Assembly: GCA_002269645.1 (NCBI GenBank)
Contig: NIVC01001004.1
Location: 62,001-126,000 of the forward strand
Direction: 5' to 3'
Length of the DNA stretch: 64,000 bases
From: Macrostomum lignano
Taxonomy: Eukaryota
Shown: one piece after another, positions 1,440-44,356 of the stretch
Layout: every line of letters begins with the position of its first letter
Numbering within the stretch: position 1 is the stretch's first letter
Position numbers and translations under genes: made by a program
Notes under the pieces: generated by a model
Databases searched by the model: none
Seen by the model: the letters and a program-made list of their open reading frames with translations, nothing else
What the model was told of the DNA's origin: nothing

Positions 1440-3191
<1,752 letters not shown>

Positions 3192-5633: not shown

Positions 5634-6348
<715 letters not shown>

Positions 6349-6849
6349 ATAGAGGTGGGTAGGTAGGTATGTAGGTAAGTAGATAGATCACTCAGGTAGA
6401 TAGACGGATAGAAGCAGTGCAGGCCCATTTCACTACTTCCGCACTGCATTGCAAGCCGGTTTGCTCACGCAGGTATGCAGAGTGAGCAAGTCGAGAAAGG
6501 AAAAAACAGTGGAAATTCATCTCCCCAGGTAAATATTTCCCGAATCTCGATCTGCCTCCGCTGCGGGGGCCGGCCAAAGTAAATGGAAATTTTTCCCATT
6601 CTTGGCCAGCCCCTATGCATTTGTCTCAGTAAAGCTGCAAATCGCTGCAGACACCTGCCGTTAATTAATCTTTCTTTTGACTGCCGGCCCTTCTGCAAAA
6701 GTCTGCAAAAGTGTCGTTGTAATCGAGTTTCCGTTTTTTGGGCTATTTATTATATTTACTGTTGCCAACAGGTCTGTTTATTCACTGTTGGCATTCCATA
6801 TTTGGTCAAATGAAAATGGGCTCGAAAACTGCACAGCTCATCTACAGCG

Positions 6850-13900: not shown

Positions 13901-16645
13901 AGACAGCAAGCATCGCCCAGACAGCAAGCATCCCCCAGACAGCAAGCATCCCCCAGACAGCAAGCAGCCCATAGCAAGCATCCCCCAGACAGCAAGCATC
14001 CCCCAGACAGCAAGCAGCCCATAGCAAGCATCCCCCAGACAGCAAGCAGCCCATAGCAAGCATTCCCTAGATAGAAAGCATCCCCCAGACAGCAAGCATC
14101 CCCTAGATAGCAAGCATTCCCCAGACAGCAAGCAAGCATCCCCCAGACAGCAAGCAAGCATCCCCCAGACAGCAAGCAAGCATCCCCCAGACAGCAAGCA
14201 TCGCCCAGACAGCAAGCATCCCCCAGACAGCAAGCATCGCCCAGACAGCAAGCATCCCCCAGACAGCAAGCATCCCCCAGACAGCAAGCATCCCCAAGAC
14301 AGCAAGCATCGCCCAGACAGCAAGCATCCCCCAGACAGCAAGCATCCCCCAGACAGCAAGCATCCCCCAGACAGCAAGCATCGCCCAGACAGCAAGCATC
14401 GCCCAGACAGCAAGCATCGCCCAGACAGCAAGCATCCCCCAGACAGCAAGCATCCCCCAGACAGCAAGCAGCCCATAGCAAGCATCCCCCAGACAGCAAG
14501 CATCCCCCAGACAGCAAGCATTGCCCAGACAGCAAGCATCCCCCAGACAGCAAGCAGCCCATAGCAAGCATTCCCCAGATAGCAAGCATCCCCCAGACAG
14601 CAAGCATCCCCTAGATAGCAAGCATTCCCCAGACAGCAAGCAAGCATCCCCCAGACAGCAAGCAAGCATCCCCAGACAGCAAGCAAGCATCCCCCAGACA
14701 GCAAGCATCCCTCAGACAGCAAGCATCCCCAGACAGCAAGCATCGCCCAGACAGCAAGCATCCCCCAGACAGCAAGCAGCCCACAGCAAGCATCCCCAGA
14801 TAGCAAGCATCCCCCAGACAGCAAGCATCCCCCAGACAGCAAGCATCCCCCAGACAGCAAGCATCCCCCAGACAGCAAGCATCCCCCAGACAGCAAGCAT
14901 CCCCCAGACAGCAAGCATCCCCAGACAGCAAGCAGCCCACAGCAAGCATCCCCCAGATAGCAAGCATCCCCCAGACAGCAAGCATCCCCCAGACAGCAAG
15001 CATCCCCCAGATAGCAAGCATCCCCCAGACAGCAAGCATCCCCAAGACAGCAAGCATCCCCCAGACAGCAAGCAGCCCACAGCAAGCATCCCCAGATAGC
15101 AAGCATCCCCCAGACAGCAAGCATCCCCAGACAGCAAGCATCCCCCAGATAGCAAGCATCCCCCAGACAGCAAGCATCCCCCAGACAGCAAGCATCCCCC
15201 AGATAGCAAGCATCCCCCAGACAGCAAGCATCCCCAAGACAGCAAGCATCCCCAAGACAGCAAGCATCCCCAAGACAGCAAGCAGCCCATAGCAAGCATC
15301 CCCCAGACAGCAAGCATCCCCCAGACAGCAAGCATCGCCCAGACAGCAAGCATCCCCCAGACAGCAAGCAGCCCATAGCAAGCATTCCCCAGATAGCAAG
15401 CATCCCCCAGACAGCAAGCATCCCCTAGATAGCAAGCATTCCCCAGACAGCAAGCAAGCATCCCCCAGACAGCAAGCAAGCATCCCCCAGACAGCAAGCA
15501 AGCATCCCCCAGATAGCAAGCATCCCCCAGACAGCAAGCATCCCCCAGACAGCAAGCATCGCCCAGACAGCAAGCATCCCCCAGACAGCAAGCAGCCCAC
15601 AGCAAGCATCCCCAGATAGCAAGCATCCCCCAGACAGCAAGCATCCCCCAGACAGCAAGCATCCCCCAGACAGCAAGCATCCCCCAGACAGCAAGCATCC
15701 CCCAGACAGCAAGCATCCCCCAGACAGCAAGCAGCCCACAGCAAGCATCCCCCAGATAGCAAGCATCCCCCAGACAGCAAGCATCCCCCAGACAGCAAGC
15801 ATCCCCCAGATAGCAAGCATCCCCCAGACAGCAAGCATCCCCAAGACAGCAAGCATCCCCCAGACAGCAAGCAGCCCACAGCAAGCATCCCCCAGATAGC
15901 AAGCATCCCCCAGACAGCAAGCATCCCCAGACAGCAAGCATCCCCCAGATAGCAAGCATCCCCCAGACAGCAAGCATCCCCCAGACAGCAAGCATCCCCC
16001 AGATAGCAAGCATCCCCCAGACAGCAAGCATCCCCAAGACAGCAAGCATCCCCAAGACAGCAAGCATCCCCCAGACAGCAAGCATCCCCAAGACAGCAAG
16101 CATCCCCCAGACAGCAAGCATCCCCCAGATAGCAAGCATCCCCCAGACAGCAAGCATCCCCCAGACAGCAAGCATCCCCCAGACAGCAAGCAGCCCACAG
16201 CAAGCATCCCCCAGATAGCAAGCATCCCCCAGACAGCAAGCATCCCCCAGACAGCAAGCATCCCCAGATAGCAAGCATCCCCAGACAGCAAGCATCCCCA
16301 AGACAGCAAGCATCCCCAAGACAGCAAGCATCCCCAAGACAGCAAGCAGCCCATAGCAAGCATCCCCCAGACAGCAAGCATCCCCCAGACAGCAAGCATC
16401 GCCCAGACAGCAAGCATCCCCCAGACAGCAAGCAGCCCATAGCAAGCATTCCCCAGATAGCAAGCATCCCCCAGACAGCAAGCATCCCCTAGATAGCAAG
16501 CATTCCCCAGACAGCAAGCAAGCATCCCCCAGACAGCAAGCAAGCATCCCCCAGACAGCAAGCAAGCATCCCCCAGATAGCAAGCATCCCCCAGACAGCA
16601 AGCATCCCCCAGACAGCAAGCATCGCCCAGACAGCAAGCATCCCC
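7913..16645. repeat. 18-bp minisatellite AGACAGCAAGCATCCCCC, left part (~8.7 kb) with higher-order structure
   Basis: Roughly 490 tandem units; variants GATAG, CATCGCCC, GCAGCCCAC/CCCAT, CAAGCAAG. Source of the QQASPR / GDACCL / WGMLAV ORFs. Confidence 0.98.
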
Positions 16646-17190
16646 TATGTTATCAGTGATGACCCAAAACAAAGAAATGACGCACATCGTAGGGGATACC
16701 CGACAGGCCACATCACAGATATGACACTCCAAAAAATATATCCGACCAGAATATTTCGAAATATGACACATAAAAGTTTCGCAAAAAACTATAAATTTTG
16801 CATTACATGCTACTAATAGTAGAAATGCGAAAATAATTCGATCGCAGCTCCAAAGGGTTTCAAATAAATCGCATTAGACACAAGTCCAGCTATTTTAGTT
16901 ATATATATTATTTACTTGCAAATTTTATAATTATATTTTATGTGCATACGAATTTTAGTTATAATTAATAAGTTTTCAAATATTATATTATCTTTACATG
17001 TTTCACATGTTAGAAAATAGTTATATTAGCATGTTGAAATAGTGCATTGGTAGGCAGTCACCGAATGGGCAAATGTACTCCTGCCGGCATGCGACTTGGG
17101 CCGCTCAGCTGGGCCGGGCGGCTGCTGGGCTGCGGTGGGCGGCTGCTCAGCTGATCCGGGCTGTGACGCATCGGTCTGAGTAGAGAAATT

Positions 17191-18163
17191 GCAGTTATTG
17201 GTAGAGACAGGGCAGAATGGTAGAGACAGGGCAGTTATTGGTAGAGACAGGGCAGTTATTGGTAGAGACAGGGCAGAATGGTAGAGACAGGGCAGTTATT
17301 GGTAGAGAAAGGGCAGAATGGTAGAGACAGGGCAGAATGGTAGAGACAGGGCAGAATGGTAGAGACAGGGCAGAATGGTAGAGATAGGGCAGAATGGTAG
17401 AGACAGGGCAGTTATTGGTAGAGACAGGGCAGAATGGTAGAGACAGGGCAGAATGGTAGAGACAGGGCAGAATGGTAGAGACAGGGCAGAATGGTAGAGA
17501 AAGGGCAGAATGGTAGAGACAGGGCAGTATGGTAGAGACAGGGCAGAATGGTAGAGACAGGGCAGAATGGTAGAGACAGGGCAGAATGGTAGAGACAGGG
17601 CAGAATGGTAGAGACAGGGCAGAATGGTAGAGACAGGGCAGAATGGTAGAGACAGGGCAGAATGGTAGAGAAAGGGCAGAATGGTAGAGACAGGGCAGTA
17701 TGGTAGAGACAGGGCAGAATGGTAGAGACAGGGCAGAATGGTAGAGACAGGGCAGAATGGTAGAGACAGGGCAGAATGGTAGAGACAGGGCAGAATGGTA
17801 GAGAAAGGGCAGAATGGTAGAGACAGGGCAGAATGGTAGAGACAGGGTAGAATGGTAGAGACAGGGCAGAATGGTAGAGACAGGGTAGAATGGTAGAGAC
17901 AGGGCAGAATGGTAGAGACAGGGTAGAATGGTAGAGACAGGGCAGAATGGTAGAGAAAGGGTAGAATGGTAGAGACAGGGCAGAATGGTAGAGACAGGGC
18001 AGAATGGTAGAGAAAGGGTAGAATGGTAGAGACAGGGCAGAATGGTAGAGAAAGGGCAGAATGGTAGAGACAGGGCAGAATGGTAGAGACAGGGTAGAAT
18101 GGTAGAGACAGGGCAGAATGGTAGAGACAGGGTAGAATGGTAGAGACAGGGCAGTTATTGGTA
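17191..18163. repeat. 19-bp minisatellite GGGCAGAATGGTAGAGACA (~51 copies; 21-bp GTTATT variant mainly at the edges)
   Basis: Read directly; the 19-aa periodicity of ORF 17296..18186 equals 3 x 19 bp. Confidence 0.96.
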
Positions 18164-19436
18164 AAAATATTGCTCTTCACCTTCACTTACCATTAACTGG
18201 AATCGATCAGACGCGGCGAGCTCTTTCTCAAACGACTTTTGCCGCTTAGCGACGTCATAGCATTTGCCTTTGCGGCTTATCAGCTGTTTTATGAACTCCA
18301 ATTGTTTGGACATTTGGGTTAATTTATTGAAAAAATGAAATTAATTGACAAATAGAAATCTGGCTTTTTGAAAGGCCAACTGAAGTCCCATTTTATATGA
18401 AGCGGCAGTTTGACATCAACAAGTTCACTCTAATTTTCATTGGTTCGGAATGGGGTGGTCAAAATATTTCACGTTCATAGTACGTGTCAAATCCACTATG
18501 CTTTTAGACTCGAAGGGGTGGACTGCTTCATTTCAGTAGTGACTCATTTTGACACCAAATTACTTTGATTCAAAATGAAACATGCGCATTAACCAGCATG
18601 AAACATACATTAGGTACAATATGCCCCACTCACATTCACAGCCTCATTCACAGCCTCATTCACTGCCTCATTCACAGCCTCACAGCCAGACTCACTGATC
18701 GACCCTAATCCAGTTTGGGTTTCGAATACTCAGTTATTTCTGCATTTTCAATTCATTGAGTAGCTCTGTGAGATCCGCTGCTGTCAATATACAGTGGGCA
18801 GTGGATAACAAATAAATGACACACAATGAATTGGATAGGAATTAAATGAATGATGCAAAATAGAAATTCGAGAAATAGATTAAATATGCAAGAAAAAGAC
18901 GTATATGCTCAAAAATTAGGATGAAGTCAGTCATCAACAAATCAAAGAGTAGATAAAATTTCTCTTTGGTGACTAAATAAAGTTTACAATTTTACATATT
19001 TGGAACTGCTTGACACTATTCTTTACGATAATGGCGCAATCATAAGTTTGGTGCAACAAATTTGCTTAGATAGGTGTCTTCCACCATGAACCACCCATCA
19101 CTGTCACCGAGCATTGCGCAATCTTGAGCATACCCAGAGCACGTATTTGCTTTTAAGCAATCGTGAGAACTGCGATTCTTATCTTTACTCAAAATCCAGC
19201 TACAGTGGAAAGATCGAGAAAAGCGCGAAACACACCTCCAAACAAACCGCTGTGCATAATACAAAACAATATATAGATAAAAAGTGGAACGCTCACAGCA
19301 GGTGACCAAACCAAAAGTAAAAGCAAAGCCCAATTGTATTTTGATAAAAAGCCATTACTAAAGAAGCTGGCGAAATATTTCTGAGCTAACCTGTCAATAT
19401 CAAGTATAAGTTAAACATGTAGCGCGCTGTCTATAG

Positions 19437-22400
19437 TTAGAAATGACACTCAATGGGGCTGATATACACAGGTGCAAAGATGACGCAGAGCCCGCTACTC
19501 TCAGCATCTCTAACTAGCCCTGTCGCTGTCAATATATAGAATTAAATGGAGAGCTTAGAAATGACACTCAATGGGGCTGATATACACAGGTGCAAAGATG
19601 ACGCAGAGCCCGCTACTCTCAGCATCTCTAACTAGCCCTGTCGCTGTCAATATATAGAATTAAATGGAGAGCTTAGAAATGACACTCAATGGGGCTGATA
19701 TACACAGGTGCAAAGATGACGCAGAGCCCGCTACTCTCAGCATCTCTAACTAGCCCTGTCGCTGTCAATATATAGAATTAAATGGAGAGCTTAGAAATGA
19801 CACTCAATGGGGCTGATATACACAGGTGCAAAGATGACGCAGAGCCCGCTACTCTCAGCATCTCTAACTAGCCCTGTCGCTGTCAATATATAGAATTAAA
19901 TGGAGAGCTTAGAAATGACACTCAATGGGGCTGATATACACAGGTGCAAAGATGACGCAGAGCCCGCTACTCTCAGCATCTCTAACTAGCCCTGTCGCTG
20001 TCAATATATAGAATTAAATGGAGAGCTTAGAAATGACACTCAATGGGGCTGATATACACAGGTGCAAAGATGACGCAGAGCCCGCTACTCTCAGCATCTC
20101 TAACTAGCCCTGTCGCTGTCAATATATAGAATTAAATGGAGAGCTTAGAAATGACACTCAATGGGGCTGATATACACAGGTGCAAAGATGACGCAGAGCC
20201 CGCTACTCTCAGCATCTCTAACTAGCCCTGTCGCTGTCAATATATAGAATTAAATGGAGAGCTTAGAAATGACACTCAATGGGGCTGATATACACAGGTG
20301 CAAAGATGACGCAGAGCCCGCTACTCTCAGCATCTCTAACTAGCCCTGTCGCTGTCAATATATAGAATTAAATGGAGAGCTTAGAAATGACACTCAATGG
20401 GGCTGATATACACAGGTGCAAAGATGACGCAGAGCCCGCTACTCTCAGCATCTCTAACTAGCCCTGTCGCTGTCAATATATAGAATTAAATGGAGAGCTT
20501 AGAAATGACACTCAATGGGGCTGATATACACAGGTGCAAAGATGACGCAGAGCCCGCTACTCTCAGCATCTCTAACTAGCCCTGTCGCTGTCAATATATA
20601 GAATTAAATGGAGAGCTTAGAAATGACACTCAATGGGGCTGATATACACAGGTGCAAAGATGACGCAGAGCCCGCTACTCTCAGCATCTCTAACTAGCCC
20701 TGTCGCTGTCAATATATAGAATTAAATGGAGAGCTTAGAAATGACACTCAATGGGGCTGATATACACAGGTGCAAAGATGACGCAGAGCCCGCTACTCTC
20801 AGCATCTCTAACTAGCCCTGTCGCTGTCAATATATAGAATTAAATGGAGAGCTTAGAAATGACACTCAATGGGGCTGATATACACAGGTGCAAAGATGAC
20901 GCAGAGCCCGCTACTCTCAGCATCTCTAACTAGCCCTGTCGCTGTCAATATATAGAATTAAATGGAGAGCTTAGAAATGACACTCAATGGGGCTGATATA
21001 CACAGGTGCAAAGATGACGCAGAGCCCGCTACTCTCAGCATCTCTAACTAGCCCTGTCGCTGTCAATATATAGAATTAAATGGAGAGCTTAGAAATGACA
21101 CTCAATGGGGCTGATATACACAGGTGCAAAGATGACGCAGAGCCCGCTACTCTCAGCATCTCTAACTAGCCCTGTCGCTGTCAATATATAGAATTAAATG
21201 GAGAGCTTAGAAATGACACTCAATGGGGCTGATATACACAGGTGCAAAGATGACGCAGAGCCCGCTACTCTCAGCATCTCTAACTAGCCCTGTCGCTGTC
21301 AATATATAGAATTAAATGGAGAGCTTAGAAATGACACTCAATGGGGCTGATATACACAGGTGCAAAGATGACGCAGAGCCCGCTACTCTCAGCATCTCTA
21401 ACTAGCCCTGTCGCTGTCAATATATAGAATTAAATGGAGAGCTTAGAAATGACACTCAATGGGGCTGATATACACAGGTGCAAAGATGACGCAGAGCCCG
21501 CTACTCTCAGCATCTCTAACTAGCCCTGTCGCTGTCAATATATAGAATTAAATGGAGAGCTTAGAAATGACACTCAATGGGGCTGATATACACAGGTGCA
21601 AAGATGACGCAGAGCCCGCTACTCTCAGCATCTCTAACTAGCCCTGTCGCTGTCAATATATAGAATTAAATGGAGAGCTTAGAAATGACACTCAATGGGG
21701 CTGATATACACAGGTGCAAAGATGACGCAGAGCCCGCTACTCTCAGCATCTCTAACTAGCCCTGTCGCTGTCAATATATAGAATTAAATGGAGAGCTTAG
21801 AAATGACACTCAATGGGGCTGATATACACAGGTGCAAAGATGACGCAGAGCCCGCTACTCTCAGCATCTCTAACTAGCCCTGTCGCTGTCAATATATAGA
21901 ATTAAATGGAGAGCTTAGAAATGACACTCAATGGGGCTGATATACACAGGTGCAAAGATGACGCAGAGCCCGCTACTCTCAGCATCTCTAACTAGCCCTG
22001 TCGCTGTCAATATATAGAATTAAATGGAGAGCTTAGAAATGACACTCAATGGGGCTGATATACACAGGTGCAAAGATGACGCAGAGCCCGCTACTCTCAG
22101 CATCTCTAACTAGCCCTGTCGCTGTCAATATATAGAATTAAATGGAGAGCTTAGAAATGACACTCAATGGGGCTGATATACACAGGTGCAAAGATGACGC
22201 AGAGCCCGCTACTCTCAGCATCTCTAACTAGCCCTGTCGCTGTCAATATATAGAATTAAATGGAGAGCTTAGAAATGACACTCAATGGGGCTGATATACA
22301 CAGGTGCAAAGATGACGCAGAGCCCGCTACTCTCAGCATCTCTAACTAGCCCTGTCGCTGTCAATATATAGAATTAAATGGAGAGCTTAGAAATGACACT

Positions 22401-25400
22401 CAATGGGGCTGATATACACAGGTGCAAAGATGACGCAGAGCCCGCTACTCTCAGCATCTCTAACTAGCCCTGTCGCTGTCAATATATAGAATTAAATGGA
22501 GAGCTTAGAAATGACACTCAATGGGGCTGATATACACAGGTGCAAAGATGACGCAGAGCCCGCTACTCTCAGCATCTCTAACTAGCCCTGTCGCTGTCAA
22601 TATATAGAATTAAATGGAGAGCTTAGAAATGACACTCAATGGGGCTGATATACACAGGTGCAAAGATGACGCAGAGCCCGCTACTCTCAGCATCTCTAAC
22701 TAGCCCTGTCGCTGTCAATATATAGAATTAAATGGAGAGCTTAGAAATGACACTCAATGGGGCTGATATACACAGGTGCAAAGATGACGCAGAGCCCGCT
22801 ACTCTCAGCATCTCTAACTAGCCCTGTCGCTGTCAATATATAGAATTAAATGGAGAGCTTAGAAATGACACTCAATGGGGCTGATATACACAGGTGCAAA
22901 GATGACGCAGAGCCCGCTACTCTCAGCATCTCTAACTAGCCCTGTCGCTGTCAATATATAGAATTAAATGGAGAGCTTAGAAATGACACTCAATGGGGCT
23001 GATATACACAGGTGCAAAGATGACGCAGAGCCCGCTACTCTCAGCATCTCTAACTAGCCCTGTCGCTGTCAATATATAGAATTAAATGGAGAGCTTAGAA
23101 ATGACACTCAATGGGGCTGATATACACAGGTGCAAAGATGACGCAGAGCCCGCTACTCTCAGCATCTCTAACTAGCCCTGTCGCTGTCAATATATAGAAT
23201 TAAATGGAGAGCTTAGAAATGACACTCAATGGGGCTGATATACACAGGTGCAAAGATGACGCAGAGCCCGCTACTCTCAGCATCTCTAACTAGCCCTGTC
23301 GCTGTCAATATATAGAATTAAATGGAGAGCTTAGAAATGACACTCAATGGGGCTGATATACACAGGTGCAAAGATGACGCAGAGCCCGCTACTCTCAGCA
23401 TCTCTAACTAGCCCTGTCGCTGTCAATATATAGAATTAAATGGAGAGCTTAGAAATGACACTCAATGGGGCTGATATACACAGGTGCAAAGATGACGCAG
23501 AGCCCGCTACTCTCAGCATCTCTAACTAGCCCTGTCGCTGTCAATATATAGAATTAAATGGAGAGCTTAGAAATGACACTCAATGGGGCTGATATACACA
23601 GGTGCAAAGATGACGCAGAGCCCGCTACTCTCAGCATCTCTAACTAGCCCTGTCGCTGTCAATATATAGAATTAAATGGAGAGCTTAGAAATGACACTCA
23701 ATGGGGCTGATATACACAGGTGCAAAGATGACGCAGAGCCCGCTACTCTCAGCATCTCTAACTAGCCCTGTCGCTGTCAATATATAGAATTAAATGGAGA
23801 GCTTAGAAATGACACTCAATGGGGCTGATATACACAGGTGCAAAGATGACGCAGAGCCCGCTACTCTCAGCATCTCTAACTAGCCCTGTCGCTGTCAATA
23901 TATAGAATTAAATGGAGAGCTTAGAAATGACACTCAATGGGGCTGATATACACAGGTGCAAAGATGACGCAGAGCCCGCTACTCTCAGCATCTCTAACTA
24001 GCCCTGTCGCTGTCAATATATAGAATTAAATGGAGAGCTTAGAAATGACACTCAATGGGGCTGATATACACAGGTGCAAAGATGACGCAGAGCCCGCTAC
24101 TCTCAGCATCTCTAACTAGCCCTGTCGCTGTCAATATATAGAATTAAATGGAGAGCTTAGAAATGACACTCAATGGGGCTGATATACACAGGTGCAAAGA
24201 TGACGCAGAGCCCGCTACTCTCAGCATCTCTAACTAGCCCTGTCGCTGTCAATATATAGAATTAAATGGAGAGCTTAGAAATGACACTCAATGGGGCTGA
24301 TATACACAGGTGCAAAGATGACGCAGAGCCCGCTACTCTCAGCATCTCTAACTAGCCCTGTCGCTGTCAATATATAGAATTAAATGGAGAGCTTAGAAAT
24401 GACACTCAATGGGGCTGATATACACAGGTGCAAAGATGACGCAGAGCCCGCTACTCTCAGCATCTCTAACTAGCCCTGTCGCTGTCAATATATAGAATTA
24501 AATGGAGAGCTTAGAAATGACACTCAATGGGGCTGATATACACAGGTGCAAAGATGACGCAGAGCCCGCTACTCTCAGCATCTCTAACTAGCCCTGTCGC
24601 TGTCAATATATAGAATTAAATGGAGAGCTTAGAAATGACACTCAATGGGGCTGATATACACAGGTGCAAAGATGACGCAGAGCCCGCTACTCTCAGCATC
24701 TCTAACTAGCCCTGTCGCTGTCAATATATAGAATTAAATGGAGAGCTTAGAAATGACACTCAATGGGGCTGATATACACAGGTGCAAAGATGACGCAGAG
24801 CCCGCTACTCTCAGCATCTCTAACTAGCCCTGTCGCTGTCAATATATAGAATTAAATGGAGAGCTTAGAAATGACACTCAATGGGGCTGATATACACAGG
24901 TGCAAAGATGACGCAGAGCCCGCTACTCTCAGCATCTCTAACTAGCCCTGTCGCTGTCAATATATAGAATTAAATGGAGAGCTTAGAAATGACACTCAAT
25001 GGGGCTGATATACACAGGTGCAAAGATGACGCAGAGCCCGCTACTCTCAGCATCTCTAACTAGCCCTGTCGCTGTCAATATATAGAATTAAATGGAGAGC
25101 TTAGAAATGACACTCAATGGGGCTGATATACACAGGTGCAAAGATGACGCAGAGCCCGCTACTCTCAGCATCTCTAACTAGCCCTGTCGCTGTCAATATA
25201 TAGAATTAAATGGAGAGCTTAGAAATGACACTCAATGGGGCTGATATACACAGGTGCAAAGATGACGCAGAGCCCGCTACTCTCAGCATCTCTAACTAGC
25301 CCTGTCGCTGTCAATATATAGAATTAAATGGAGAGCTTAGAAATGACACTCAATGGGGCTGATATACACAGGTGCAAAGATGACGCAGAGCCCGCTACTC

Positions 25401-28400
25401 TCAGCATCTCTAACTAGCCCTGTCGCTGTCAATATATAGAATTAAATGGAGAGCTTAGAAATGACACTCAATGGGGCTGATATACACAGGTGCAAAGATG
25501 ACGCAGAGCCCGCTACTCTCAGCATCTCTAACTAGCCCTGTCGCTGTCAATATATAGAATTAAATGGAGAGCTTAGAAATGACACTCAATGGGGCTGATA
25601 TACACAGGTGCAAAGATGACGCAGAGCCCGCTACTCTCAGCATCTCTAACTAGCCCTGTCGCTGTCAATATATAGAATTAAATGGAGAGCTTAGAAATGA
25701 CACTCAATGGGGCTGATATACACAGGTGCAAAGATGACGCAGAGCCCGCTACTCTCAGCATCTCTAACTAGCCCTGTCGCTGTCAATATATAGAATTAAA
25801 TGGAGAGCTTAGAAATGACACTCAATGGGGCTGATATACACAGGTGCAAAGATGACGCAGAGCCCGCTACTCTCAGCATCTCTAACTAGCCCTGTCGCTG
25901 TCAATATATAGAATTAAATGGAGAGCTTAGAAATGACACTCAATGGGGCTGATATACACAGGTGCAAAGATGACGCAGAGCCCGCTACTCTCAGCATCTC
26001 TAACTAGCCCTGTCGCTGTCAATATATAGAATTAAATGGAGAGCTTAGAAATGACACTCAATGGGGCTGATATACACAGGTGCAAAGATGACGCAGAGCC
26101 CGCTACTCTCAGCATCTCTAACTAGCCCTGTCGCTGTCAATATATAGAATTAAATGGAGAGCTTAGAAATGACACTCAATGGGGCTGATATACACAGGTG
26201 CAAAGATGACGCAGAGCCCGCTACTCTCAGCATCTCTAACTAGCCCTGTCGCTGTCAATATATAGAATTAAATGGAGAGCTTAGAAATGACACTCAATGG
26301 GGCTGATATACACAGGTGCAAAGATGACGCAGAGCCCGCTACTCTCAGCATCTCTAACTAGCCCTGTCGCTGTCAATATATAGAATTAAATGGAGAGCTT
26401 AGAAATGACACTCAATGGGGCTGATATACACAGGTGCAAAGATGACGCAGAGCCCGCTACTCTCAGCATCTCTAACTAGCCCTGTCGCTGTCAATATATA
26501 GAATTAAATGGAGAGCTTAGAAATGACACTCAATGGGGCTGATATACACAGGTGCAAAGATGACGCAGAGCCCGCTACTCTCAGCATCTCTAACTAGCCC
26601 TGTCGCTGTCAATATATAGAATTAAATGGAGAGCTTAGAAATGACACTCAATGGGGCTGATATACACAGGTGCAAAGATGACGCAGAGCCCGCTACTCTC
26701 AGCATCTCTAACTAGCCCTGTCGCTGTCAATATATAGAATTAAATGGAGAGCTTAGAAATGACACTCAATGGGGCTGATATACACAGGTGCAAAGATGAC
26801 GCAGAGCCCGCTACTCTCAGCATCTCTAACTAGCCCTGTCGCTGTCAATATATAGAATTAAATGGAGAGCTTAGAAATGACACTCAATGGGGCTGATATA
26901 CACAGGTGCAAAGATGACGCAGAGCCCGCTACTCTCAGCATCTCTAACTAGCCCTGTCGCTGTCAATATATAGAATTAAATGGAGAGCTTAGAAATGACA
27001 CTCAATGGGGCTGATATACACAGGTGCAAAGATGACGCAGAGCCCGCTACTCTCAGCATCTCTAACTAGCCCTGTCGCTGTCAATATATAGAATTAAATG
27101 GAGAGCTTAGAAATGACACTCAATGGGGCTGATATACACAGGTGCAAAGATGACGCAGAGCCCGCTACTCTCAGCATCTCTAACTAGCCCTGTCGCTGTC
27201 AATATATAGAATTAAATGGAGAGCTTAGAAATGACACTCAATGGGGCTGATATACACAGGTGCAAAGATGACGCAGAGCCCGCTACTCTCAGCATCTCTA
27301 ACTAGCCCTGTCGCTGTCAATATATAGAATTAAATGGAGAGCTTAGAAATGACACTCAATGGGGCTGATATACACAGGTGCAAAGATGACGCAGAGCCCG
27401 CTACTCTCAGCATCTCTAACTAGCCCTGTCGCTGTCAATATATAGAATTAAATGGAGAGCTTAGAAATGACACTCAATGGGGCTGATATACACAGGTGCA
27501 AAGATGACGCAGAGCCCGCTACTCTCAGCATCTCTAACTAGCCCTGTCGCTGTCAATATATAGAATTAAATGGAGAGCTTAGAAATGACACTCAATGGGG
27601 CTGATATACACAGGTGCAAAGATGACGCAGAGCCCGCTACTCTCAGCATCTCTAACTAGCCCTGTCGCTGTCAATATATAGAATTAAATGGAGAGCTTAG
27701 AAATGACACTCAATGGGGCTGATATACACAGGTGCAAAGATGACGCAGAGCCCGCTACTCTCAGCATCTCTAACTAGCCCTGTCGCTGTCAATATATAGA
27801 ATTAAATGGAGAGCTTAGAAATGACACTCAATGGGGCTGATATACACAGGTGCAAAGATGACGCAGAGCCCGCTACTCTCAGCATCTCTAACTAGCCCTG
27901 TCGCTGTCAATATATAGAATTAAATGGAGAGCTTAGAAATGACACTCAATGGGGCTGATATACACAGGTGCAAAGATGACGCAGAGCCCGCTACTCTCAG
28001 CATCTCTAACTAGCCCTGTCGCTGTCAATATATAGAATTAAATGGAGAGCTTAGAAATGACACTCAATGGGGCTGATATACACAGGTGCAAAGATGACGC
28101 AGAGCCCGCTACTCTCAGCATCTCTAACTAGCCCTGTCGCTGTCAATATATAGAATTAAATGGAGAGCTTAGAAATGACACTCAATGGGGCTGATATACA
28201 CAGGTGCAAAGATGACGCAGAGCCCGCTACTCTCAGCATCTCTAACTAGCCCTGTCGCTGTCAATATATAGAATTAAATGGAGAGCTTAGAAATGACACT
28301 CAATGGGGCTGATATACACAGGTGCAAAGATGACGCAGAGCCCGCTACTCTCAGCATCTCTAACTAGCCCTGTCGCTGTCAATATATAGAATTAAATGGA

Positions 28401-31396
28401 GAGCTTAGAAATGACACTCAATGGGGCTGATATACACAGGTGCAAAGATGACGCAGAGCCCGCTACTCTCAGCATCTCTAACTAGCCCTGTCGCTGTCAA
28501 TATATAGAATTAAATGGAGAGCTTAGAAATGACACTCAATGGGGCTGATATACACAGGTGCAAAGATGACGCAGAGCCCGCTACTCTCAGCATCTCTAAC
28601 TAGCCCTGTCGCTGTCAATATATAGAATTAAATGGAGAGCTTAGAAATGACACTCAATGGGGCTGATATACACAGGTGCAAAGATGACGCAGAGCCCGCT
28701 ACTCTCAGCATCTCTAACTAGCCCTGTCGCTGTCAATATATAGAATTAAATGGAGAGCTTAGAAATGACACTCAATGGGGCTGATATACACAGGTGCAAA
28801 GATGACGCAGAGCCCGCTACTCTCAGCATCTCTAACTAGCCCTGTCGCTGTCAATATATAGAATTAAATGGAGAGCTTAGAAATGACACTCAATGGGGCT
28901 GATATACACAGGTGCAAAGATGACGCAGAGCCCGCTACTCTCAGCATCTCTAACTAGCCCTGTCGCTGTCAATATATAGAATTAAATGGAGAGCTTAGAA
29001 ATGACACTCAATGGGGCTGATATACACAGGTGCAAAGATGACGCAGAGCCCGCTACTCTCAGCATCTCTAACTAGCCCTGTCGCTGTCAATATATAGAAT
29101 TAAATGGAGAGCTTAGAAATGACACTCAATGGGGCTGATATACACAGGTGCAAAGATGACGCAGAGCCCGCTACTCTCAGCATCTCTAACTAGCCCTGTC
29201 GCTGTCAATATATAGAATTAAATGGAGAGCTTAGAAATGACACTCAATGGGGCTGATATACACAGGTGCAAAGATGACGCAGAGCCCGCTACTCTCAGCA
29301 TCTCTAACTAGCCCTGTCGCTGTCAATATATAGAATTAAATGGAGAGCTTAGAAATGACACTCAATGGGGCTGATATACACAGGTGCAAAGATGACGCAG
29401 AGCCCGCTACTCTCAGCATCTCTAACTAGCCCTGTCGCTGTCAATATATAGAATTAAATGGAGAGCTTAGAAATGACACTCAATGGGGCTGATATACACA
29501 GGTGCAAAGATGACGCAGAGCCCGCTACTCTCAGCATCTCTAACTAGCCCTGTCGCTGTCAATATATAGAATTAAATGGAGAGCTTAGAAATGACACTCA
29601 ATGGGGCTGATATACACAGGTGCAAAGATGACGCAGAGCCCGCTACTCTCAGCATCTCTAACTAGCCCTGTCGCTGTCAATATATAGAATTAAATGGAGA
29701 GCTTAGAAATGACACTCAATGGGGCTGATATACACAGGTGCAAAGATGACGCAGAGCCCGCTACTCTCAGCATCTCTAACTAGCCCTGTCGCTGTCAATA
29801 TATAGAATTAAATGGAGAGCTTAGAAATGACACTCAATGGGGCTGATATACACAGGTGCAAAGATGACGCAGAGCCCGCTACTCTCAGCATCTCTAACTA
29901 GCCCTGTCGCTGTCAATATATAGAATTAAATGGAGAGCTTAGAAATGACACTCAATGGGGCTGATATACACAGGTGCAAAGATGACGCAGAGCCCGCTAC
30001 TCTCAGCATCTCTAACTAGCCCTGTCGCTGTCAATATATAGAATTAAATGGAGAGCTTAGAAATGACACTCAATGGGGCTGATATACACAGGTGCAAAGA
30101 TGACGCAGAGCCCGCTACTCTCAGCATCTCTAACTAGCCCTGTCGCTGTCAATATATAGAATTAAATGGAGAGCTTAGAAATGACACTCAATGGGGCTGA
30201 TATACACAGGTGCAAAGATGACGCAGAGCCCGCTACTCTCAGCATCTCTAACTAGCCCTGTCGCTGTCAATATATAGAATTAAATGGAGAGCTTAGAAAT
30301 GACACTCAATGGGGCTGATATACACAGGTGCAAAGATGACGCAGAGCCCGCTACTCTCAGCATCTCTAACTAGCCCTGTCGCTGTCAATATATAGAATTA
30401 AATGGAGAGCTTAGAAATGACACTCAATGGGGCTGATATACACAGGTGCAAAGATGACGCAGAGCCCGCTACTCTCAGCATCTCTAACTAGCCCTGTCGC
30501 TGTCAATATATAGAATTAAATGGAGAGCTTAGAAATGACACTCAATGGGGCTGATATACACAGGTGCAAAGATGACGCAGAGCCCGCTACTCTCAGCATC
30601 TCTAACTAGCCCTGTCGCTGTCAATATATAGAATTAAATGGAGAGCTTAGAAATGACACTCAATGGGGCTGATATACACAGGTGCAAAGATGACGCAGAG
30701 CCCGCTACTCTCAGCATCTCTAACTAGCCCTGTCGCTGTCAATATATAGAATTAAATGGAGAGCTTAGAAATGACACTCAATGGGGCTGATATACACAGG
30801 TGCAAAGATGACGCAGAGCCCGCTACTCTCAGCATCTCTAACTAGCCCTGTCGCTGTCAATATATAGAATTAAATGGAGAGCTTAGAAATGACACTCAAT
30901 GGGGCTGATATACACAGGTGCAAAGATGACGCAGAGCCCGCTACTCTCAGCATCTCTAACTAGCCCTGTCGCTGTCAATATATAGAATTAAATGGAGAGC
31001 TTAGAAATGACACTCAATGGGGCTGATATACACAGGTGCAAAGATGACGCAGAGCCCGCTACTCTCAGCATCTCTAACTAGCCCTGTCGCTGTCAATATA
31101 TAGAATTAAATGGAGAGCTTAGAAATGACACTCAATGGGGCTGATATACACAGGTGCAAAGATGACGCAGAGCCCGCTACTCTCAGCATCTCTAACTAGC
31201 CCTGTCGCTGTCAATATATAGAATTAAATGGAGAGCTTAGAAATGACACTCAATGGGGCTGATATACACAGGTGCAAAGATGACGCAGAGCCCGCTACTC
31301 TCAGCATCTCTAACTAGCCCTGTCGCTGTCAATATATAGAATTAAATGGAGAGCTTAGAAATGACACTCAATGGGGCTGATATACGCAGGTGCAAA
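19437..31396. repeat. 118-bp satellite, 101 full copies plus a 42-bp partial copy, apparently identical
   Basis: Unit TTAGAAATGACACTCAATGGGGCTGATATACACAGGTGCAAAGATGACGCAGAGCCCGCTACTCTCAGCATCTCTAACTAGCCCTGTCGCTGTCAATATATAGAATTAAATGGAGAGC. TGCAAA ends at 19478 and 31396, a difference of 11918 = 101 x 118 exactly. Confidence 0.98.
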
Positions 31397-31707
31397 TATT
31401 GTTATTTACATAGTTATTTGAATAACTATAACTTCAAATAGTTTTTCGAAGGATTGTAGTTTTGTCTCTTGAAGTCTAATATGTGTCTTTGTTTTTCTCC
31501 TTAAAGTAGTGTATCTGATTTTAGCTTTATTTTTGTTGGGATAGGGAAAATCTTGTGTTGTTTTATTGGTTTAAGTTTCGTCATTTTTTATATGGGGTAT
31601 ATTTAGAATATATCCTTTTTTGAAACGGTAATTTTTTGCGCGTCATTTTTAGTTACTTAGAGGATATATTCGATTGTGTCATTTCTACATTCTGCGTCAT
31701 CCAAACG

Positions 31708-34700
31708 CCCCCAGACAGCAAGCAGCCCACAGCAAGCATCCCCAGATAGCAAGCATCCCCCAGACAGCAAGCATCCCCCAGACAGCAAGCATCCCCCAGA
31801 CAGCAAGCATCCCCCAGACAGCAAGCATCCCCCAGACAGCAAGCATCCCCCAGACAGCAAGCAGCCCACAGCAAGCATCCCCCAGATAGCAAGCATCCCC
31901 CAGACAGCAAGCATCCCCAGACAGCAAGCATCCCCCAGATAGCAAGCATCCCCCAGACAGCAAGCATCCCCCAGACAGCAAGCAGCCCACAGCAAGCATC
32001 CCCCAGATAGCAAGCATCCCCCAGACAGCAAGCATCCCCAGACAGCAAGCATCCCCAGATAGCAAGCATCCCCAGACAGCAAGCATCCCCAAGACAGCAA
32101 GCATCCCCCAGACAGCAAGCAGCCCACAGCAAGCATCCCCCAGATAGCAAGCATCCCCCAGACAGCAAGCATCCCCCAGACAGCAAGCATCCCCCAGATA
32201 GCAAGCATCCCCCAGACAGCAAGCATCCCCCAGACAGCAAGCATCCCCCAGATAGCAAGCATCCCCCAGACAGCAAGCATCCCCAAGACAGCAAGCATCC
32301 CCAAGACAGCAAGCATCCCCAAGACAGCAAGCATCCCCAAGACAGCAAGCATCCCCAAGACAGCAAGCATCCCCAAGACAGCAAGCATCCCCAGACAGCA
32401 AGCATCGCCCAGACAGCAAGCATCCCCAGACAGCAAGCATCCCCAAGACAGCAAGCATCCCCAAGACAGCAAGCATCCCCAAGACAGCAAGCATCCCCAA
32501 GACAGCAAGCATCCCCAAGACAGCAAGCATCCCCAAGACAGCAAGCATCCCCAAGACAGCAAGCATCCCCAAGACAGCAAGCATCCCCAAGACAGCAAGC
32601 ATCCCCAAGACAGCAAGCATCCCCAAGACAGCAAGCATCCCCCAGACAGCAAGCATCCCCCAGATAGCAAGCATCCCCCAGACAGCAAGCATCCCCCAGA
32701 CAGCAAGCATCCCCCAGACAGCAAGCATCCCCCAGATAGCAAGCATCCCCCAGACAGCAAGCATCCCCAAGACAGCAAGCATCCCCAGACAGCAAGCAGC
32801 CCACAGCAAGCATCCCCAGATAGCAAGCATCCCCCAGACAGCAAGCATCCCCCAGACAGCAAGCATCCCCAGATAGCAAGCATCCCCCAGACAGCAAGCA
32901 TCCCCCAGACAGCAAGCATCCCCCAGATAGCAAGCATCCCCCAGACAGCAAGCATCCCCAAGACAGCAAGCATCCCCAAGACAGCAAGCATCCCCAAGAC
33001 AGCAAGCAGCCCATAGCAAGCATCCCCCAGACAGCAAGCATCCCCCAGACAGCAAGCATCGCCCAGACAGCAAGCATCCCCCAGACAGCAAGCAGCCCAT
33101 AGCAAGCATTCCCCAGATAGCAAGCATCCCCCAGACAGCAAGCATCCCCTAGATAGCAAGCATTCCCCAGACAGCAAGCAAGCATCCCCCAGACAGCAAG
33201 CAAGCATCCCCCAGACAGCAAGCAAGCATCCCCCAGATAGCAAGCATCCCCCAGACAGCAAGCATCCCCAGACAGCAAGCATCGCCCAGACAGCAAGCAT
33301 CCCCCAGACAGCAAGCAGCCCACAGCAAGCATCCCCAGATAGCAAGCATCCCCCAGACAGCAAGCATCCCCAGACAGCAAGCATCCCCCAGACAGCAAGC
33401 ATCCCCCAGACAGCAAGCATCCCCAAGACAGCAAGCATCCCCCAGACAGCAAGCATCCCCCAGACAGCAAGCATCCCCACACAGCAAGCATCCCCCAGAC
33501 AGCAAGCATCCCCCAGACAGCAAGCATCCCCAAGACAGCAAGCATCCCCAAGACAGCAAGCATCCCCAAGACAGCAAGCATCCCCAGACAGCAAGCATCC
33601 CCCAGACAGCAAGCATCCCCAGACAGCAAGCATCCGCCAGACAGCAAGCATCCCCAGACAGCAAGCATCCCCAGACAGCAAGCATCCCCAAGACAGCAAG
33701 CACCCCAAGACAGCAAGCATCCCCAAGACAGCAAGCATCCCCAGACAGCAAGCATCCCCCAGACAGCAAGCATCCCCAGACAGCAAGCATCCCCCAGACA
33801 GCAAGCATCCCCCAGACAGCAAGCATCCCCCAGACAGCAAGCATCCCCCAGACAGCAAGCATCCCCCAGACAGCAAGCATCCCCAAGACAGCAAGCATCC
33901 CCCAGACAGCAAGCATCCCCCAGACAGCAAGCATCCCCAAGACAGCAAGCATCCCCAAGACAGCAAGCATCCCCCAGACAGCAAGCATCCCCCAGACAGC
34001 AAGCATCCCCAGACAGCAAGCATCCCCCAGACAGCAAGCATCCCCAAGACAGCAAGCATCCCCAGACAGCAAGCATCCCCCAGACAGCAAGCATCCCCCA
34101 GACAGCAAGCATCCCCCAGACAGCAAGCATCCCCCAGACAGCAAGCATCCCCCAGACAGCAAGCATCCCCAAGACAGCAAGCATCCCCAAGACAGCAAGC
34201 ATCCCCAAGACAGCAAGCATCCCCCAGACAGCAAGCATCCCCCAGACAGCAAGCATCCCCAGACAGCAAGCATCCCCCAGACAGCAAGCATCCCCCAGAC
34301 AGCAAGCATCCCCCAGACAGCAAGCATCCCCAGACAGCAAGCATCCCCAAGACAGCAAGCATCCCCAAGACAGCAAGCATCCCCCAGACAGCAAGCATCC
34401 CCCAGACAGCAAGCATCCCCCAGACAGCAAGCATCCCCAGACAGCAAGCATCCCCAAGACAGCAAGCATCCCCAGACAGCAAGCATCCCCAGACAGCAAG
34501 CATCCCCAAGACAGCAAGCATCCCCAAGACAGCAAGCATCCCCAATACAGCAAGCATCCCCAGACAGCAAGCATCCCCCAGACAGCAAGCATCCCCCAGA
34601 CAGCAAGCATCCCCAAGACAGCAAGCATCCCCCAGACAGCAAGCATCCCCCAGACAGCAAGCATCCCCCAGACAGCAAGCATCCCCCAGACAGCAAGCAT

Positions 34701-43740: not shown

Positions 43741-44217
43741 AGGGCGCCAGCTAGAGGGGGCGCCAGCTACAGAAGAGGCGCCAGCTATAGAGGGAGTGCT
43801 GGCTACAGTGTGGGGACGCCAGCTACATAGGGGGGCGCCAGCTACAGAAGAGGCGCCAGCTATAGAGGGAGTGCCGGCTACAGTGGGGACGCCAGCTACA
43901 TAGGGAGGCGCCAGCTACAGAGAGGGCGCCAGCTACAGAGTGGGCGCCAGCTACAGTGGGGACGCCAGCTACATAGGGAGGCGCCAGCTACAGAGAGGGC
44001 GCCAGCTACAGAGTGGGCGCCAGCTACAGTGGGGGCGCCAGCTACAGAGAGGGCGCCAGATACAGAGTGGGCGCCAGCTACAGAGGGGGCGCCAGCTACA
44101 GAGTGGGCGCCAGCTACAGTGGGGGCGCCAGCTACAGAGGGGGCGCCAGCTACAGAGTGGGCGCCAGCTACAGTGGGGGCGCCAGCTACAGAGAGGGCGC
44201 CAGATACAGAGGGCGCC
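43741..44217. repeat. GGCGCC-core minisatellite type A (GGGCGCCAGCTACAGAG variants) in eIF3K intron 2
   Basis: Tandem ~18-20-bp units. Confidence 0.95.
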
Positions 44218-44356
44218 TTTGTAGCTAGAGCACAAATGTAACAACTCGTGCACATTATTCCATTCGGTATTTAATAGCCTACTATAAGTAGAGTAGATAA
44301 AGTTTTTTGTTTGTGAAAGTCTTAATTTCAGTCTCGAACTGTCTATTTCTTTGCAG

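What the first reader, a model, noticed from the sequence alone, without database searches (positions are those of the whole stretch)
16646..31707. 15-kb segment inserted in register into a higher-order minisatellite
The left array ends ...CATCGCCCAGACAGCAAGCATCCCC (16645). The right array begins CCCCCAGACAGCAAGCAGCCCACAGCAAGCATCCCCAGATAG (31708). This is exactly what follows the same rare-variant string in the intact copy at ~15365-15960. The two arrays therefore read as one ~14-kb array cut inside a C5 run, with 4 extra C (possible CCCC TSD or short crossover core). The insert has imperfect inverted ends, no coding capacity I can find, and carries two satellites (19 bp and 118 bp). Its termini (TATG...AACG) fit no TIR superfamily I recognise. 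Inference: a large non-autonomous element of unclear class that transports satellites.
Basis: partly seen in the sequence, partly recalled or inferred. Interest (0 to 1): 0.85.

Follow-up and report, generated by a model that had tools for sequence, protein, structure and literature searches.

The report
Mobile satellite-carrying element in a flatworm
The 15-kb block is a real insertion of a recently mobile, multi-copy DNA element of the flatworm Macrostomum lignano that moves long satellite arrays and a tiny spliced gene to new places, but the enzyme that moves it is still unknown.

Summary
Window 16646-31707 interrupts an 18-bp higher-order array in register, with exactly four extra C. The ends are significant imperfect inverted repeats. 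Between them lie a 19-bp array (50 units) and a 118-bp array (101 units).

One sub-claim is wrong. The insert does code: a two-exon, 90-aa gene on the minus strand is 100% identical to an annotated Macrostomum lignano protein. The 19-bp array sits in its intron.

The same element occurs on two other contigs of assembly GCA_002269645.1. Its unique parts are 99.6-99.8% identical there. Its left terminus (...TGATAACATA in gene orientation) is identical to the base, and the flanks are unrelated. CCC(C) abuts that terminus in all three copies. The order of 19-bp unit variants is shared, so the array travelled with the element.

It is therefore a recently active, non-autonomous mobile element that carries satellites. 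Its class is unresolved. Asymmetric tips and an oriented, non-palindromic CCC(C) junction make me lean towards integration of a circle by a site-specific recombinase (about 0.4) over DDE cut-and-paste (about 0.3). A Crypton-like tyrosine-recombinase element lies 354 bp from one copy, but it shares no end sequence with this element. The right end was seen only in the window.

The parts
7923..16645 (+). Left part of the host 18-bp higher-order minisatellite (consensus CAGCAAGCATCCCCCAGA)
   Evidence: TRF; variant-pattern analysis; lag peaks at 3415 and 3626 bp
16642..16645 (+). Left copy of the CCCC tetranucleotide (duplicated target or crossover core)
   Evidence: CCCC or CCC also abuts this terminus in L001 and L002
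16646..31707 (.). The inserted mobile element (15,062 bp)
   Evidence: In-register flanks. Left boundary reproduced in L001 and L002
16646..16790 (+). Left end. 12-nt tip TATGTTATCAGT, then four WATGACNC motifs at 16658, 16676, 16720 and 16762. Imperfect inverted repeat of the right end
17026..17175 (-). Exon 2 (49 codons plus stop) of the 90-aa gene
17176..18190 (-). Intron (1015 nt, GTAAGT...CTCAG) that holds the 19-bp satellite
17199..18154 (+). 19-bp satellite TGGTAGAGACAGGGCAGAA, about 50 units. The order of unit variants is shared with the other two copies
18191..18313 (-). Exon 1 (41 codons, MSKQLEFIKQ...FQLM), identical in all annotated paralogues
18314..19436 (.). Unique internal segment. 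Contains a degenerate 118-bp-monomer-like stretch at about 18780-18828 with an AATGACAC motif at 18815
19437..31396 (+). 118-bp satellite: 101 base-for-base identical monomers. Each carries AATGACAC and GATGACGC in the same orientation as the left end
31397..31707 (+). Right end. Motifs GCGTCATT (31640), GTGTCATT (31676) and GCGTCATC (31694) on the opposite strand. 6-nt tip CAAACG
31708..31711 (+). Right copy of the CCCC tetranucleotide
31708..36906 (+). Right part of the host 18-bp array

Best explanation
The block is one copy of a recently active, non-autonomous mobile DNA element of Macrostomum lignano.

Anatomy: about 3 kb of unique sequence, a 90-aa two-exon gene, a roughly 1-kb 19-bp array inside that gene's intron, and a 9-12-kb 118-bp array.

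Shown:
- It sits in three unrelated genomic contexts with the same left terminus.
- The copies are nearly identical.
- The 19-bp array was inherited as an array.
- In the window it split a C5 run, leaving CCCC on both sides.

Inferred:
- It moves as DNA. The intron and both arrays are retained.
- It is moved by a protein supplied in trans that binds the WATGACNC motifs. These occur four times at each end in inverted orientation, and twice in every 118-bp monomer.

My preferred mechanism is that the element is excised as a circle with the junction ...GCGTCATCCAAACG-CCC(C)-TATGTTATCAGTGATGACCC... A site-specific recombinase (tyrosine type, Crypton-like in action) then integrates it by crossover between that CCC(C) core and a C-run in the target. 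Both junctions would then carry the core in a fixed orientation.

The 118-bp array would have arisen by internal amplification of a segment bearing two binding motifs. It now changes in copy number after insertion (101, 75 and at least 62 units).

Probability that the block is a mobile-element insertion of this kind: about 0.9. Probability that the mechanism is recombinase/circle integration: about 0.4.
For: Multi-copy with a defined terminus:
- L001 (NIVC01003287.1) and L002 (NIVC01001458.1) carry the same element. It ends at ...CACTGATAACATA and is followed by GGGGCGCAGAAAG... and GGGAGAATTCGG... The window has GGGGATGCTTGC....
- Unique parts are 99.6-99.8% identical.
- At least six protein variants of the gene are annotated.

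Array carried along: shared order of 19-bp unit variants.

Real insertion: register, the 4 extra C, and no other C-run of 6 or more.

Binding-site-like motifs: AATGACRC and GATGACSC occur in the 64-kb window only inside the element. They are forward at the left end, reversed at the right end, and forward in every monomer.

Evidence for an asymmetric mechanism rather than a symmetric one:
- The tips are not inverted repeats (12 nt against 6 nt before the first motif).
- The junction tetranucleotide is non-palindromic and has the same orientation relative to the element in 3 of 3 copies.
- No terminal hairpins stand out.

An active tyrosine-recombinase element family exists in this genome: P0010, a 449-aa intact ORF, with a 98% identical second copy. 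It has inverted-repeat ends. One copy lies 354 bp from the element in L002.
Against: - The right end and the second CCCC were seen in only one copy. L001 stops 255 nt short and L002 is cut by the contig end.
- Three flanks cannot separate 'CCC is target' from 'CCC is element'.
- The element has about 120-bp inverted ends with repeated subterminal motifs. This is the usual look of DDE transposons, and published animal Cryptons have no terminal repeats (PMC3212892).
- The 22-bp gap between the innermost motifs of the putative circle junction is longer than the 6-8-bp overlap of classical tyrosine-recombinase sites.
- The only tyrosine-recombinase element whose DNA I could read shares no end sequence with this element. 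It also uses a different junction (AAT/ATAAT).
- No autonomous partner was found.
Confidence: 0.4

Rival explanations
1. It is the same mobile, non-autonomous element, but moved by a DDE cut-and-paste transposase. The enzyme binds the subterminal WATGACNC repeats, prefers C-runs, and makes a 4-bp staggered cut, so CCCC is a true target-site duplication. The superfamily is either undescribed or has atypical tips.
For: - Significant inverted ends of about 120 bp, with four motif copies each.
- Exactly 4 extra bases at the insertion.
- DDE elements are by far the commonest DNA transposons with this architecture (own knowledge).
- A mariner-like remnant in the same window shows that DDE elements are present in this genome.
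Against: - The terminal 6-12 nt of the two ends are not inverted repeats.
- The target is non-palindromic and has the same orientation in 3 of 3 copies. This would happen by chance 1 time in 4.
- The signatures of hAT (8-bp TSD), piggyBac and Kolobok (TTAA), Tc1/mariner (TA) and PIF (TWA) are not met.
- No transposase remnant is present in the element.
- No annotated protein shares exon 1 with a longer transposase.
Confidence: 0.3
2. It is the same element, but moved by a single-strand HUH (Rep-type) enzyme. This would resemble IS200/IS605, Helitrons or Replitrons: orientation-specific insertion 3' of a short target (YCCC) with little or no true duplication.
For: - Oriented CCC at the left flank in 3 of 3 copies, and asymmetric tips.
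- Replitrons insert orientation-specifically next to a dinucleotide and can give variable duplications (PMC10288648).
- The perfect homogeneity of the 118-bp array would fit replicative amplification.
Against: - No significant terminal hairpins (z-scores -0.5 to -1.6).
- Helitron signatures (5'-TC, 3'-CTRR, A|T or T|T insertion) are absent.
- Replitrons are described from plants, algae and protists, not animals (PMC10288648).
- No Rep gene was seen.
Confidence: 0.1
3. It is not a transposon. A 15-kb chromosomal segment or extrachromosomal circle was captured at a double-strand break by end joining or microhomology. The other two loci are segmental duplicates.
For: - Satellite-rich extrachromosomal circles are common (own knowledge).
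- A 4-nt C overlap could be microhomology.
Against: - Three copies end at the identical base with unrelated sequence beyond it.
- CCC adjoins the end in all three. Chance is about 2e-4 for the two additional copies.
- The ends are inverted repeats with ordered motifs.
- The flanking genes differ.
Confidence: 0.05
4. It is an assembly artefact: a misjoin of a satellite-rich contig into the 18-bp array.
For: The region is extremely repetitive. The 118-bp array is suspiciously perfect.
Against: - Two independent misjoins would have to restore the array's local variant register and leave exactly 4 extra C.
- The same left terminus is found in an independent assembly on two contigs.
Confidence: 0.02

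Closest known systems
Crypton DNA transposons and their non-autonomous derivatives (tyrosine recombinase; Goodwin 2003; Kojima & Jurka 2011, PMC3212892)
   Same: - Short (4-6 bp) direct repeats at both junctions, regarded as recombination substrates.
- No fixed palindromic target.
- Non-autonomous derivatives exist.
- Large cargo is mechanistically easy.
- Crypton-like recombinase elements are present and recently active in this genome.
   Different: - No recombinase gene in the element.
- Published animal Cryptons lack terminal repeats, whereas this element has inverted ends of about 120 bp.
- No end-sequence similarity to the one M. lignano recombinase element I could read.
- That element uses an AAT/ATAAT junction, not CCCC.
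Tetris / Foldback-type transposons that seed satellites (Drosophila virilis, PMC4079207)
   Same: A DNA transposon whose internal tandem repeats are related to its terminal repeat motifs and act as the building blocks of a satellite.
   Different: - Tetris and Foldback elements have long TIRs that are themselves made of tandem repeats on both sides.
- Here one array, in one orientation, lies next to one end only.
- Here the array is 9-12 kb inside a unit that is still mobile.
Helentron / DINE-1 / bivalve 'pearl'-type rolling-circle elements carrying tandem repeats (own knowledge)
   Same: Non-autonomous elements with asymmetric ends and subterminal inverted repeats that carry and spread tandem repeats.
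   Different: - Those elements insert between T and T and have characteristic termini and a 3' hairpin. None of this is seen here.
- Their arrays are usually a few monomers long.
hAT / CACTA / P-type class II elements with subterminal repeated binding motifs (own knowledge)
   Same: Several copies of an 8-12-nt motif in inverted orientation in the terminal 100-150 bp of both ends. Non-autonomous derivatives with unrelated internal content.
   Different: - TSD length and sequence do not fit (8 bp for hAT, 2-3 bp for CACTA, 7-8 bp for P).
- The tips are not inverted repeats and lack the CACTA or YARNG signatures.
Replitrons (Rep HUH, PMC10288648)
   Same: Orientation-specific insertion next to a short target. 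Variable short duplications that include the target. Asymmetric ends.
   Different: - Replitron ends carry a short direct repeat of the element terminus and a right-end palindrome.
- They are not known from animals.
- No such features were found here.

Membership tests
Mobile element (any class) | Two or more copies with the same termini in unrelated flanks | tested here: met
   Met for the left terminus. It is identical to the base in the window, L001 and L002, with unrelated flanks. The right terminus was seen only in the window.
Mobile element (any class) | Empty site that matches the flanks | tested here: met
   Intact array copies serve as a proxy. The reconstructed site aligns over 1000/1000 nt, best with 4 bases removed. 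No true empty allele was available.
Class II TIR (DDE) transposons | Terminal inverted repeats that include the tips | tested here: inconclusive
   Subterminal inverted similarity is significant (62 against 29 +/- 5). The outermost 12 nt (left) and 6 nt (right) are not inverted repeats.
Class II TIR (DDE) transposons | Target-site duplication of fixed length in all copies | tested here: inconclusive
   4 extra C in the window. Only the left flanks of the other copies are known: CCCC and CCC.
Class II TIR (DDE) transposons | DDE transposase in an autonomous relative with the same ends | not testable with these tools
   The M. lignano genome could not be searched by DNA. No annotated protein shares exon 1 with a longer product.
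hAT | 8-bp TSD and YARNG tips | tested here: not met
   The flanks GCATCCCC and CCCCCAGA are not an 8-bp repeat. The tips are TATG and CGTT.
piggyBac / Kolobok / Tc1-mariner / PIF-Harbinger | TTAA, TA or TWA target duplication | tested here: not met
   The junctions are CCCC and CCCCC.
Helitron / Helentron | 5'-TC...CTRR-3' termini, insertion between A|T or T|T, 3' hairpin | tested here: not met
   The termini are TATG...AACG on one strand and CGTT...CATA on the other. Insertion is within a C-run. No significant hairpin.
Crypton | Encodes a tyrosine recombinase, or shares both termini with an element that does | tested here: not met
   No recombinase gene in the insert. No similarity to the ends of the recombinase element in L002/L005 or to L006/L007. 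Other recombinase families of this genome (P0013-P0015) could not be read as DNA.
Crypton | Short (4-6 bp) direct repeats at both termini as recombination substrate | tested here: inconclusive
   CCCC lies on both sides in the window. CCCC and CCC lie at the left of the other two copies. The right sides of those copies were not seen.
Foldback / Tetris | Long TIRs composed of tandem repeats at both ends | tested here: not met
   The 118-bp array is in one orientation, 311 bp from the right end only.
Non-LTR retroelement or retrocopy | RNA intermediate: intron loss, 3' tail, variable 5' truncation | tested here: not met
   The 1-kb intron is retained in all three copies. There is no A-tail or microsatellite tail at either end.
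Replitron | Rep (Y1 HUH) gene, terminal short direct repeat of the element end, right-end palindrome | tested here: not met
   No Rep ORF. No direct repeat of 8 nt or more shared by the two tips. No significant hairpin.

The most novel reading that the evidence does not exclude
The element may represent an undescribed way in which animal genomes spread satellites. A recombinase-driven or otherwise asymmetric mobile element integrates at C-runs and carries kilobase-scale arrays as cargo. The arrays are themselves made of the enzyme's binding motifs, about 200 extra sites per copy. Whole satellite arrays would then be seeded at new loci in a single step. This could help explain why about 15% of the M. 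lignano genome is simple and tandem repeats. The element's ends fit no described eukaryotic superfamily, so it could define a new one.
Probability: 0.2. Interest if true: 0.85.

Novelty: new variant of a known kind. Interest (0 to 1): 0.6.

Why it matters
How satellite arrays reach new chromosomal sites is an old open question. Most documented links between transposons and satellites involve a few monomers inside an element, followed by local expansion.

Here a unit that is about 85% satellite appears to have moved recently and intact at least three times. The 19-bp array is demonstrably inherited as an array.

The host is a laboratory flatworm with transgenesis, inbred lines and long-read assemblies. 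De novo insertions, circle junctions and the mobilising enzyme could therefore be looked for directly.

The work also corrects an annotation. The 'hypothetical protein' genes BOX15_Mlig001263g3 and BOX15_Mlig018228g1 are transposon-borne.

Tried and rejected
1. Other copies or fragments of the insert's unique parts inside the window: none found.
2. Rfam scan of the window: nothing.
3. Exact look-up of the 52-aa exon-1 ORF and of paralogues P0002 and P0004: not on record.
4. Empty site for the L002 copy through homeologues of the flanking zinc-finger gene (L003, L004). Homology starts only 2.07 kb beyond the element. The interval turned out to be other inserted DNA, namely a foldback plus a truncated tyrosine-recombinase element. 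No clean empty site could be obtained.
5. Test of whether that recombinase element is the autonomous partner. There is no DNA similarity by BLAST. Alignment of the putative circle junction to the ends of L005, L006 and L007 is not significant (14 tests, p = 0.03-0.98). L002:10327-10420 against the L005 5' region is not significant either.
6. Similarity of the L001 flank to the element: none.
7. Terminal hairpins: not significant.
8. Metagenome scan with the 20-nt left tip gave 5 hits. All are chance matches inside unrelated coding sequence, and homology does not extend beyond the 20-mer.
9. Function of the 90-aa protein. No Pfam or PDB match. The AlphaFold model has low confidence (pLDDT 57) and shows one long helix plus disorder.
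10. Monomer-variant comparison of the 118-bp arrays between copies was uninformative, because the monomers are identical.
11. Wasik et al. 2015 could not be read because it is not held.

Full report
**What is in the window.**
The window is extremely rich in tandem repeats. An 18-bp minisatellite occupies 7923-16645 and 31708-36906. The 15,062 bp in between have a different composition. They consist of:
- 553 bp of unique sequence (16646-17198);
- a 19-bp array of about 50 units (17199-18154);
- 1282 bp of unique sequence (18155-19436);
- a 118-bp array of 101 units (19437-31396);
- 311 bp of unique sequence (31397-31707).

**Check of the observation.**
The left array ends in ...CATCGCCCAGACAGCAAGCATCCCC. 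That string recurs in pairs about 224 bp apart along the array. After the second member of each pair the array always continues CAGACAGCAAGCAGCCCACAGCAAGCATCCCCAGATAG. This is exactly the sequence that follows the insert once four C are set aside.

Joining 500 bp from each side gives a 1000-nt sequence that aligns end to end with the intact array at 12412-13433. The score peaks when exactly 4 bases are removed. Among 145 alternative joins in unit phase, the real one ranks third. None of the 783 C-runs in the array exceeds five C, so the 4+5 C at the two junctions is unique. A super-period of about 3.4-3.6 kb confirms the higher-order structure.

The two ends of the insert align as imperfect inverted repeats over about 120 bp. 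The score is 62, against 29 +/- 5 for shuffles, with 0 of 1000 shuffles reaching it. Control segments from elsewhere reach at most 34.

The insert does have coding capacity.

**The gene and the organism.**
On the minus strand, an ATG at 18313 opens 41 codons that end at a GTAAGT donor (exon 1, 18313-18191). After a 1015-nt intron that contains the whole 19-bp array, a CTCAG acceptor leads into 49 codons and a stop (exon 2, 17175-17026). The spliced 90-aa product is 100% identical over its full length to NCBI protein BOX15_Mlig001263g3 of the flatworm Macrostomum lignano.

Five further annotated variants exist. Exon 1 is invariant in all of them, and exon 2 differs by substitutions and frameshifts. 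The protein has no Pfam or PDB relatives. Its model is one long helix followed by disorder, at low confidence. I cannot say what it does. The frameshifted exon 2 variants argue against strong constraint on that part.

**Other copies.**
The identical protein is annotated on two contigs of assembly GCA_002269645.1. Both loci carry the same element:
- the 118-bp array (74.6 units in L001; at least 61.6 in L002, where the contig starts inside the array);
- the unique segment;
- the gene with its 19-bp array (64 and 62 units);
- the left unique segment.

The unique parts are 99.6-99.8% identical to the window copy. In all three copies homology stops at the same base...CACTGATAACATA in gene orientation. 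What follows is unrelated:
- the 18-bp array in the window;
- GGGGCGCAGAAAGCGCG... in L001;
- GGGAGAATTCGGTAAC... in L002.

The neighbouring genes also differ. This is the signature of a mobile element with a defined terminus. CCC(C) directly abuts that terminus in all three copies.

The right terminus could be read only in the window. L001 begins 56 nt inside the right unique segment, and the remaining 1255 nt of that contig could not be fetched.

**Do the satellites travel with the element?**
I coded the 19-bp units by sequence variant. The three arrays show the same order, with prefix ABBABCAAA... and suffix ...AAAAAACEAAAAACAFGAFGAFGAHGAAHGACAFGAFG. They differ only by block insertions and deletions. 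An array of at least about 50 units was therefore present in the common ancestor and was copied with the element.

The 118-bp monomers are base-for-base identical: 101 of 101 in the window. No such test is possible for them. This homogeneity means either very recent amplification or over-polishing by the assembler.

**Anatomy of the ends.**
The octamers AATGACRC and GATGACSC occur in the 64-kb window only inside the element:
- forward at the left end (16658, 16676, plus TATGACAC at 16720 and 16762);
- reversed at the right end (31694, 31676, 31640);
- once internally (18815);
- twice, forward, in every 118-bp monomer.

The 12-mers TAGAAATGACAC and GATGACGCAGA of the right end recur exactly in the monomer. 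The large satellite therefore looks like an amplified piece of end-type sequence that carries two putative protein-binding sites.

The very tips are not inverted repeats. There are 12 nt (TATGTTATCAGT) before the first motif on the left and 6 nt (CAAACG) after the last motif on the right. Neither end folds into a significant hairpin.

**Mechanism.**
An RNA intermediate is unlikely because the intron and both arrays are retained. The known signatures of hAT, piggyBac/Kolobok, Tc1/mariner, PIF, Helitron/Helentron, Foldback/Tetris and Replitron are not met (see the membership table).

Two readings remain serious.
- (a) A DDE transposase that binds the subterminal motifs and makes a 4-bp staggered cut in C-runs. 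This fits the inverted ends and the four extra bases. It does not easily explain the asymmetric tips or a non-palindromic target that has the same orientation in all three copies.
- (b) Integration of a circular form by a site-specific recombinase. Crossover would occur between a CCC(C) core at the circle junction (...GCGTCATCCAAACG-CCCC-TATGTTATCAGTGATGACCC..., a dyad of motifs around the core) and a C-run in the target.

Reading (b) explains the asymmetric tips, the oriented core on both sides and the ease of carrying 15 kb. It is how Cryptons are thought to move, using 4-6-bp terminal direct repeats as recombination substrates (PMC3212892).

I lean to (b) at about 0.4, against about 0.3 for (a). 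An HUH-type mechanism gets about 0.1. Non-transposon capture or an assembly artefact together get less than 0.1.

**A candidate enzyme family, not linked.**
In L002 the 2.07 kb between the element's left end and sequence shared with two homeologous loci (L003, L004) is itself inserted DNA. It contains a foldback and a 5'-truncated, frameshifted copy of an element of about 1.85 kb. An intact copy of that element lies at L005:9723-11569. The intact copy has 23-nt terminal inverted repeats and a 449-aa ORF (P0010).

Evidence that this ORF is a tyrosine recombinase:
- UniRef names it a Tyr-recombinase-domain protein.
- Pfam gives consistent but sub-threshold matches to the catalytic end of Phage_integrase and to the QRICH1 domain across five family members.
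- The HxxR and GQRSE...Y motifs are visible in the sequence.

Crypton-like elements are therefore recently active in this genome, and one sits 354 bp from a copy of the satellite element. However, I found no sequence similarity between their ends. The recombinase element also uses an AAT/ATAAT junction rather than CCCC. The partnership is a lead, not a finding.

**Comparison with what is known, and novelty.**
Transposons that carry or seed tandem repeats are known. Examples are Tetris (PMC4079207), Helentron/DINE-1-type elements and many MITE-derived satellites. The kind is therefore not new.

What is unusual here:
- the scale, with 10-13 kb of arrays inside a unit that still moves;
- arrays built from the element's own end motifs;
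- a spliced gene whose intron is a satellite;
- ends and a target that match no superfamily I could test.

I file it as a new variant of a known kind. There is a roughly 0.2 chance that it represents an undescribed class or an undescribed recombinase-driven route for spreading satellites.

**Limits.**
No DNA search of the M. lignano genome was possible with these tools. Copy number, right-end boundaries in other copies, the target logo, an autonomous partner, empty alleles and read support remain to be established. A metagenome scan with the left tip returned only chance matches.

Noticed in passing
L005:9723-11569 (NIVC01002014.1); L002:10681-12400: A Crypton-like tyrosine-recombinase element of about 1.85 kb, with 23-nt terminal inverted repeats and an intact 449-aa ORF (P0010). 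A second copy is 98% identical but 5'-truncated and frameshifted. Homeologous loci L003 (about 7761) and L004 (about 7603) are empty at the L002 site, with AAT shared at the junction.
   Followed up: partly
L005:9617-9720: A 104-bp foldback (36-nt arms, 86% complementary) lies directly against the left end of the recombinase element. It contains GTCTATGG-type motifs that resemble that element's termini. It may be a miniature relative inserted in tandem.
   Followed up: no
window 19437-31396: All 101 monomers of the 118-bp array are base-for-base identical. Only the truncated last unit differs. This means either extremely recent amplification or homogenisation by assembly polishing.
   Followed up: partly
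window 49169-49666 and 60152-60565: Two ORFs match the start and the end of Pfam MFS_2 (E about 1e-23 each). They look like exons of one transporter gene. The roughly 10 kb between them is filled with 22/23-bp (51243-57437) and 47-bp (57694-60026) satellites.
   Followed up: no
window 44307-44900: A single long ORF matches the CSN8/PSMD8/EIF3K family (Pfam E = 3e-27). It is flanked on both sides by arrays of the same 18-bp unit in opposite orientations (43742-44213 against 46414-47171 and 48565-48869).
   Followed up: no
window 41073-42135 (minus strand): Two adjacent ORFs look like remnants of a Tc1/mariner-type transposase. There is a weak DDE_3 match (E = 0.012) and an N-terminal helix-turn-helix-like part.
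   Followed up: no
window 4356-5053 and 48872-49125: The same 20-bp unit (TCTTGGTGGGCGCCCCTGTC and its reverse complement) forms arrays in opposite orientation 44 kb apart.
   Followed up: no
proteins P0002-P0005, P0009: Annotated paralogues of the 90-aa gene keep exon 1 identical. Exon 2 differs by indels and frameshifts, and UniRef gives them unrelated automatic names (Caprin-1_dimer, MamL-1, Peroxin-14, DM domain). The gene models are transposon-borne and probably weakly constrained.
   Followed up: partly
window 1440-3196 and 5634-6353: Long (GACA)n and (GACA)n/(AGAT)n microsatellites of 1.7 kb and 0.7 kb.
   Followed up: no
L001:11938-12640: The flank of the L001 copy is a repeat rich in AGGTG in its first part and CACCTTT in its second part, as if it were another element's inverted subterminal regions. 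All three recovered insertions lie in other repeats.
   Followed up: no
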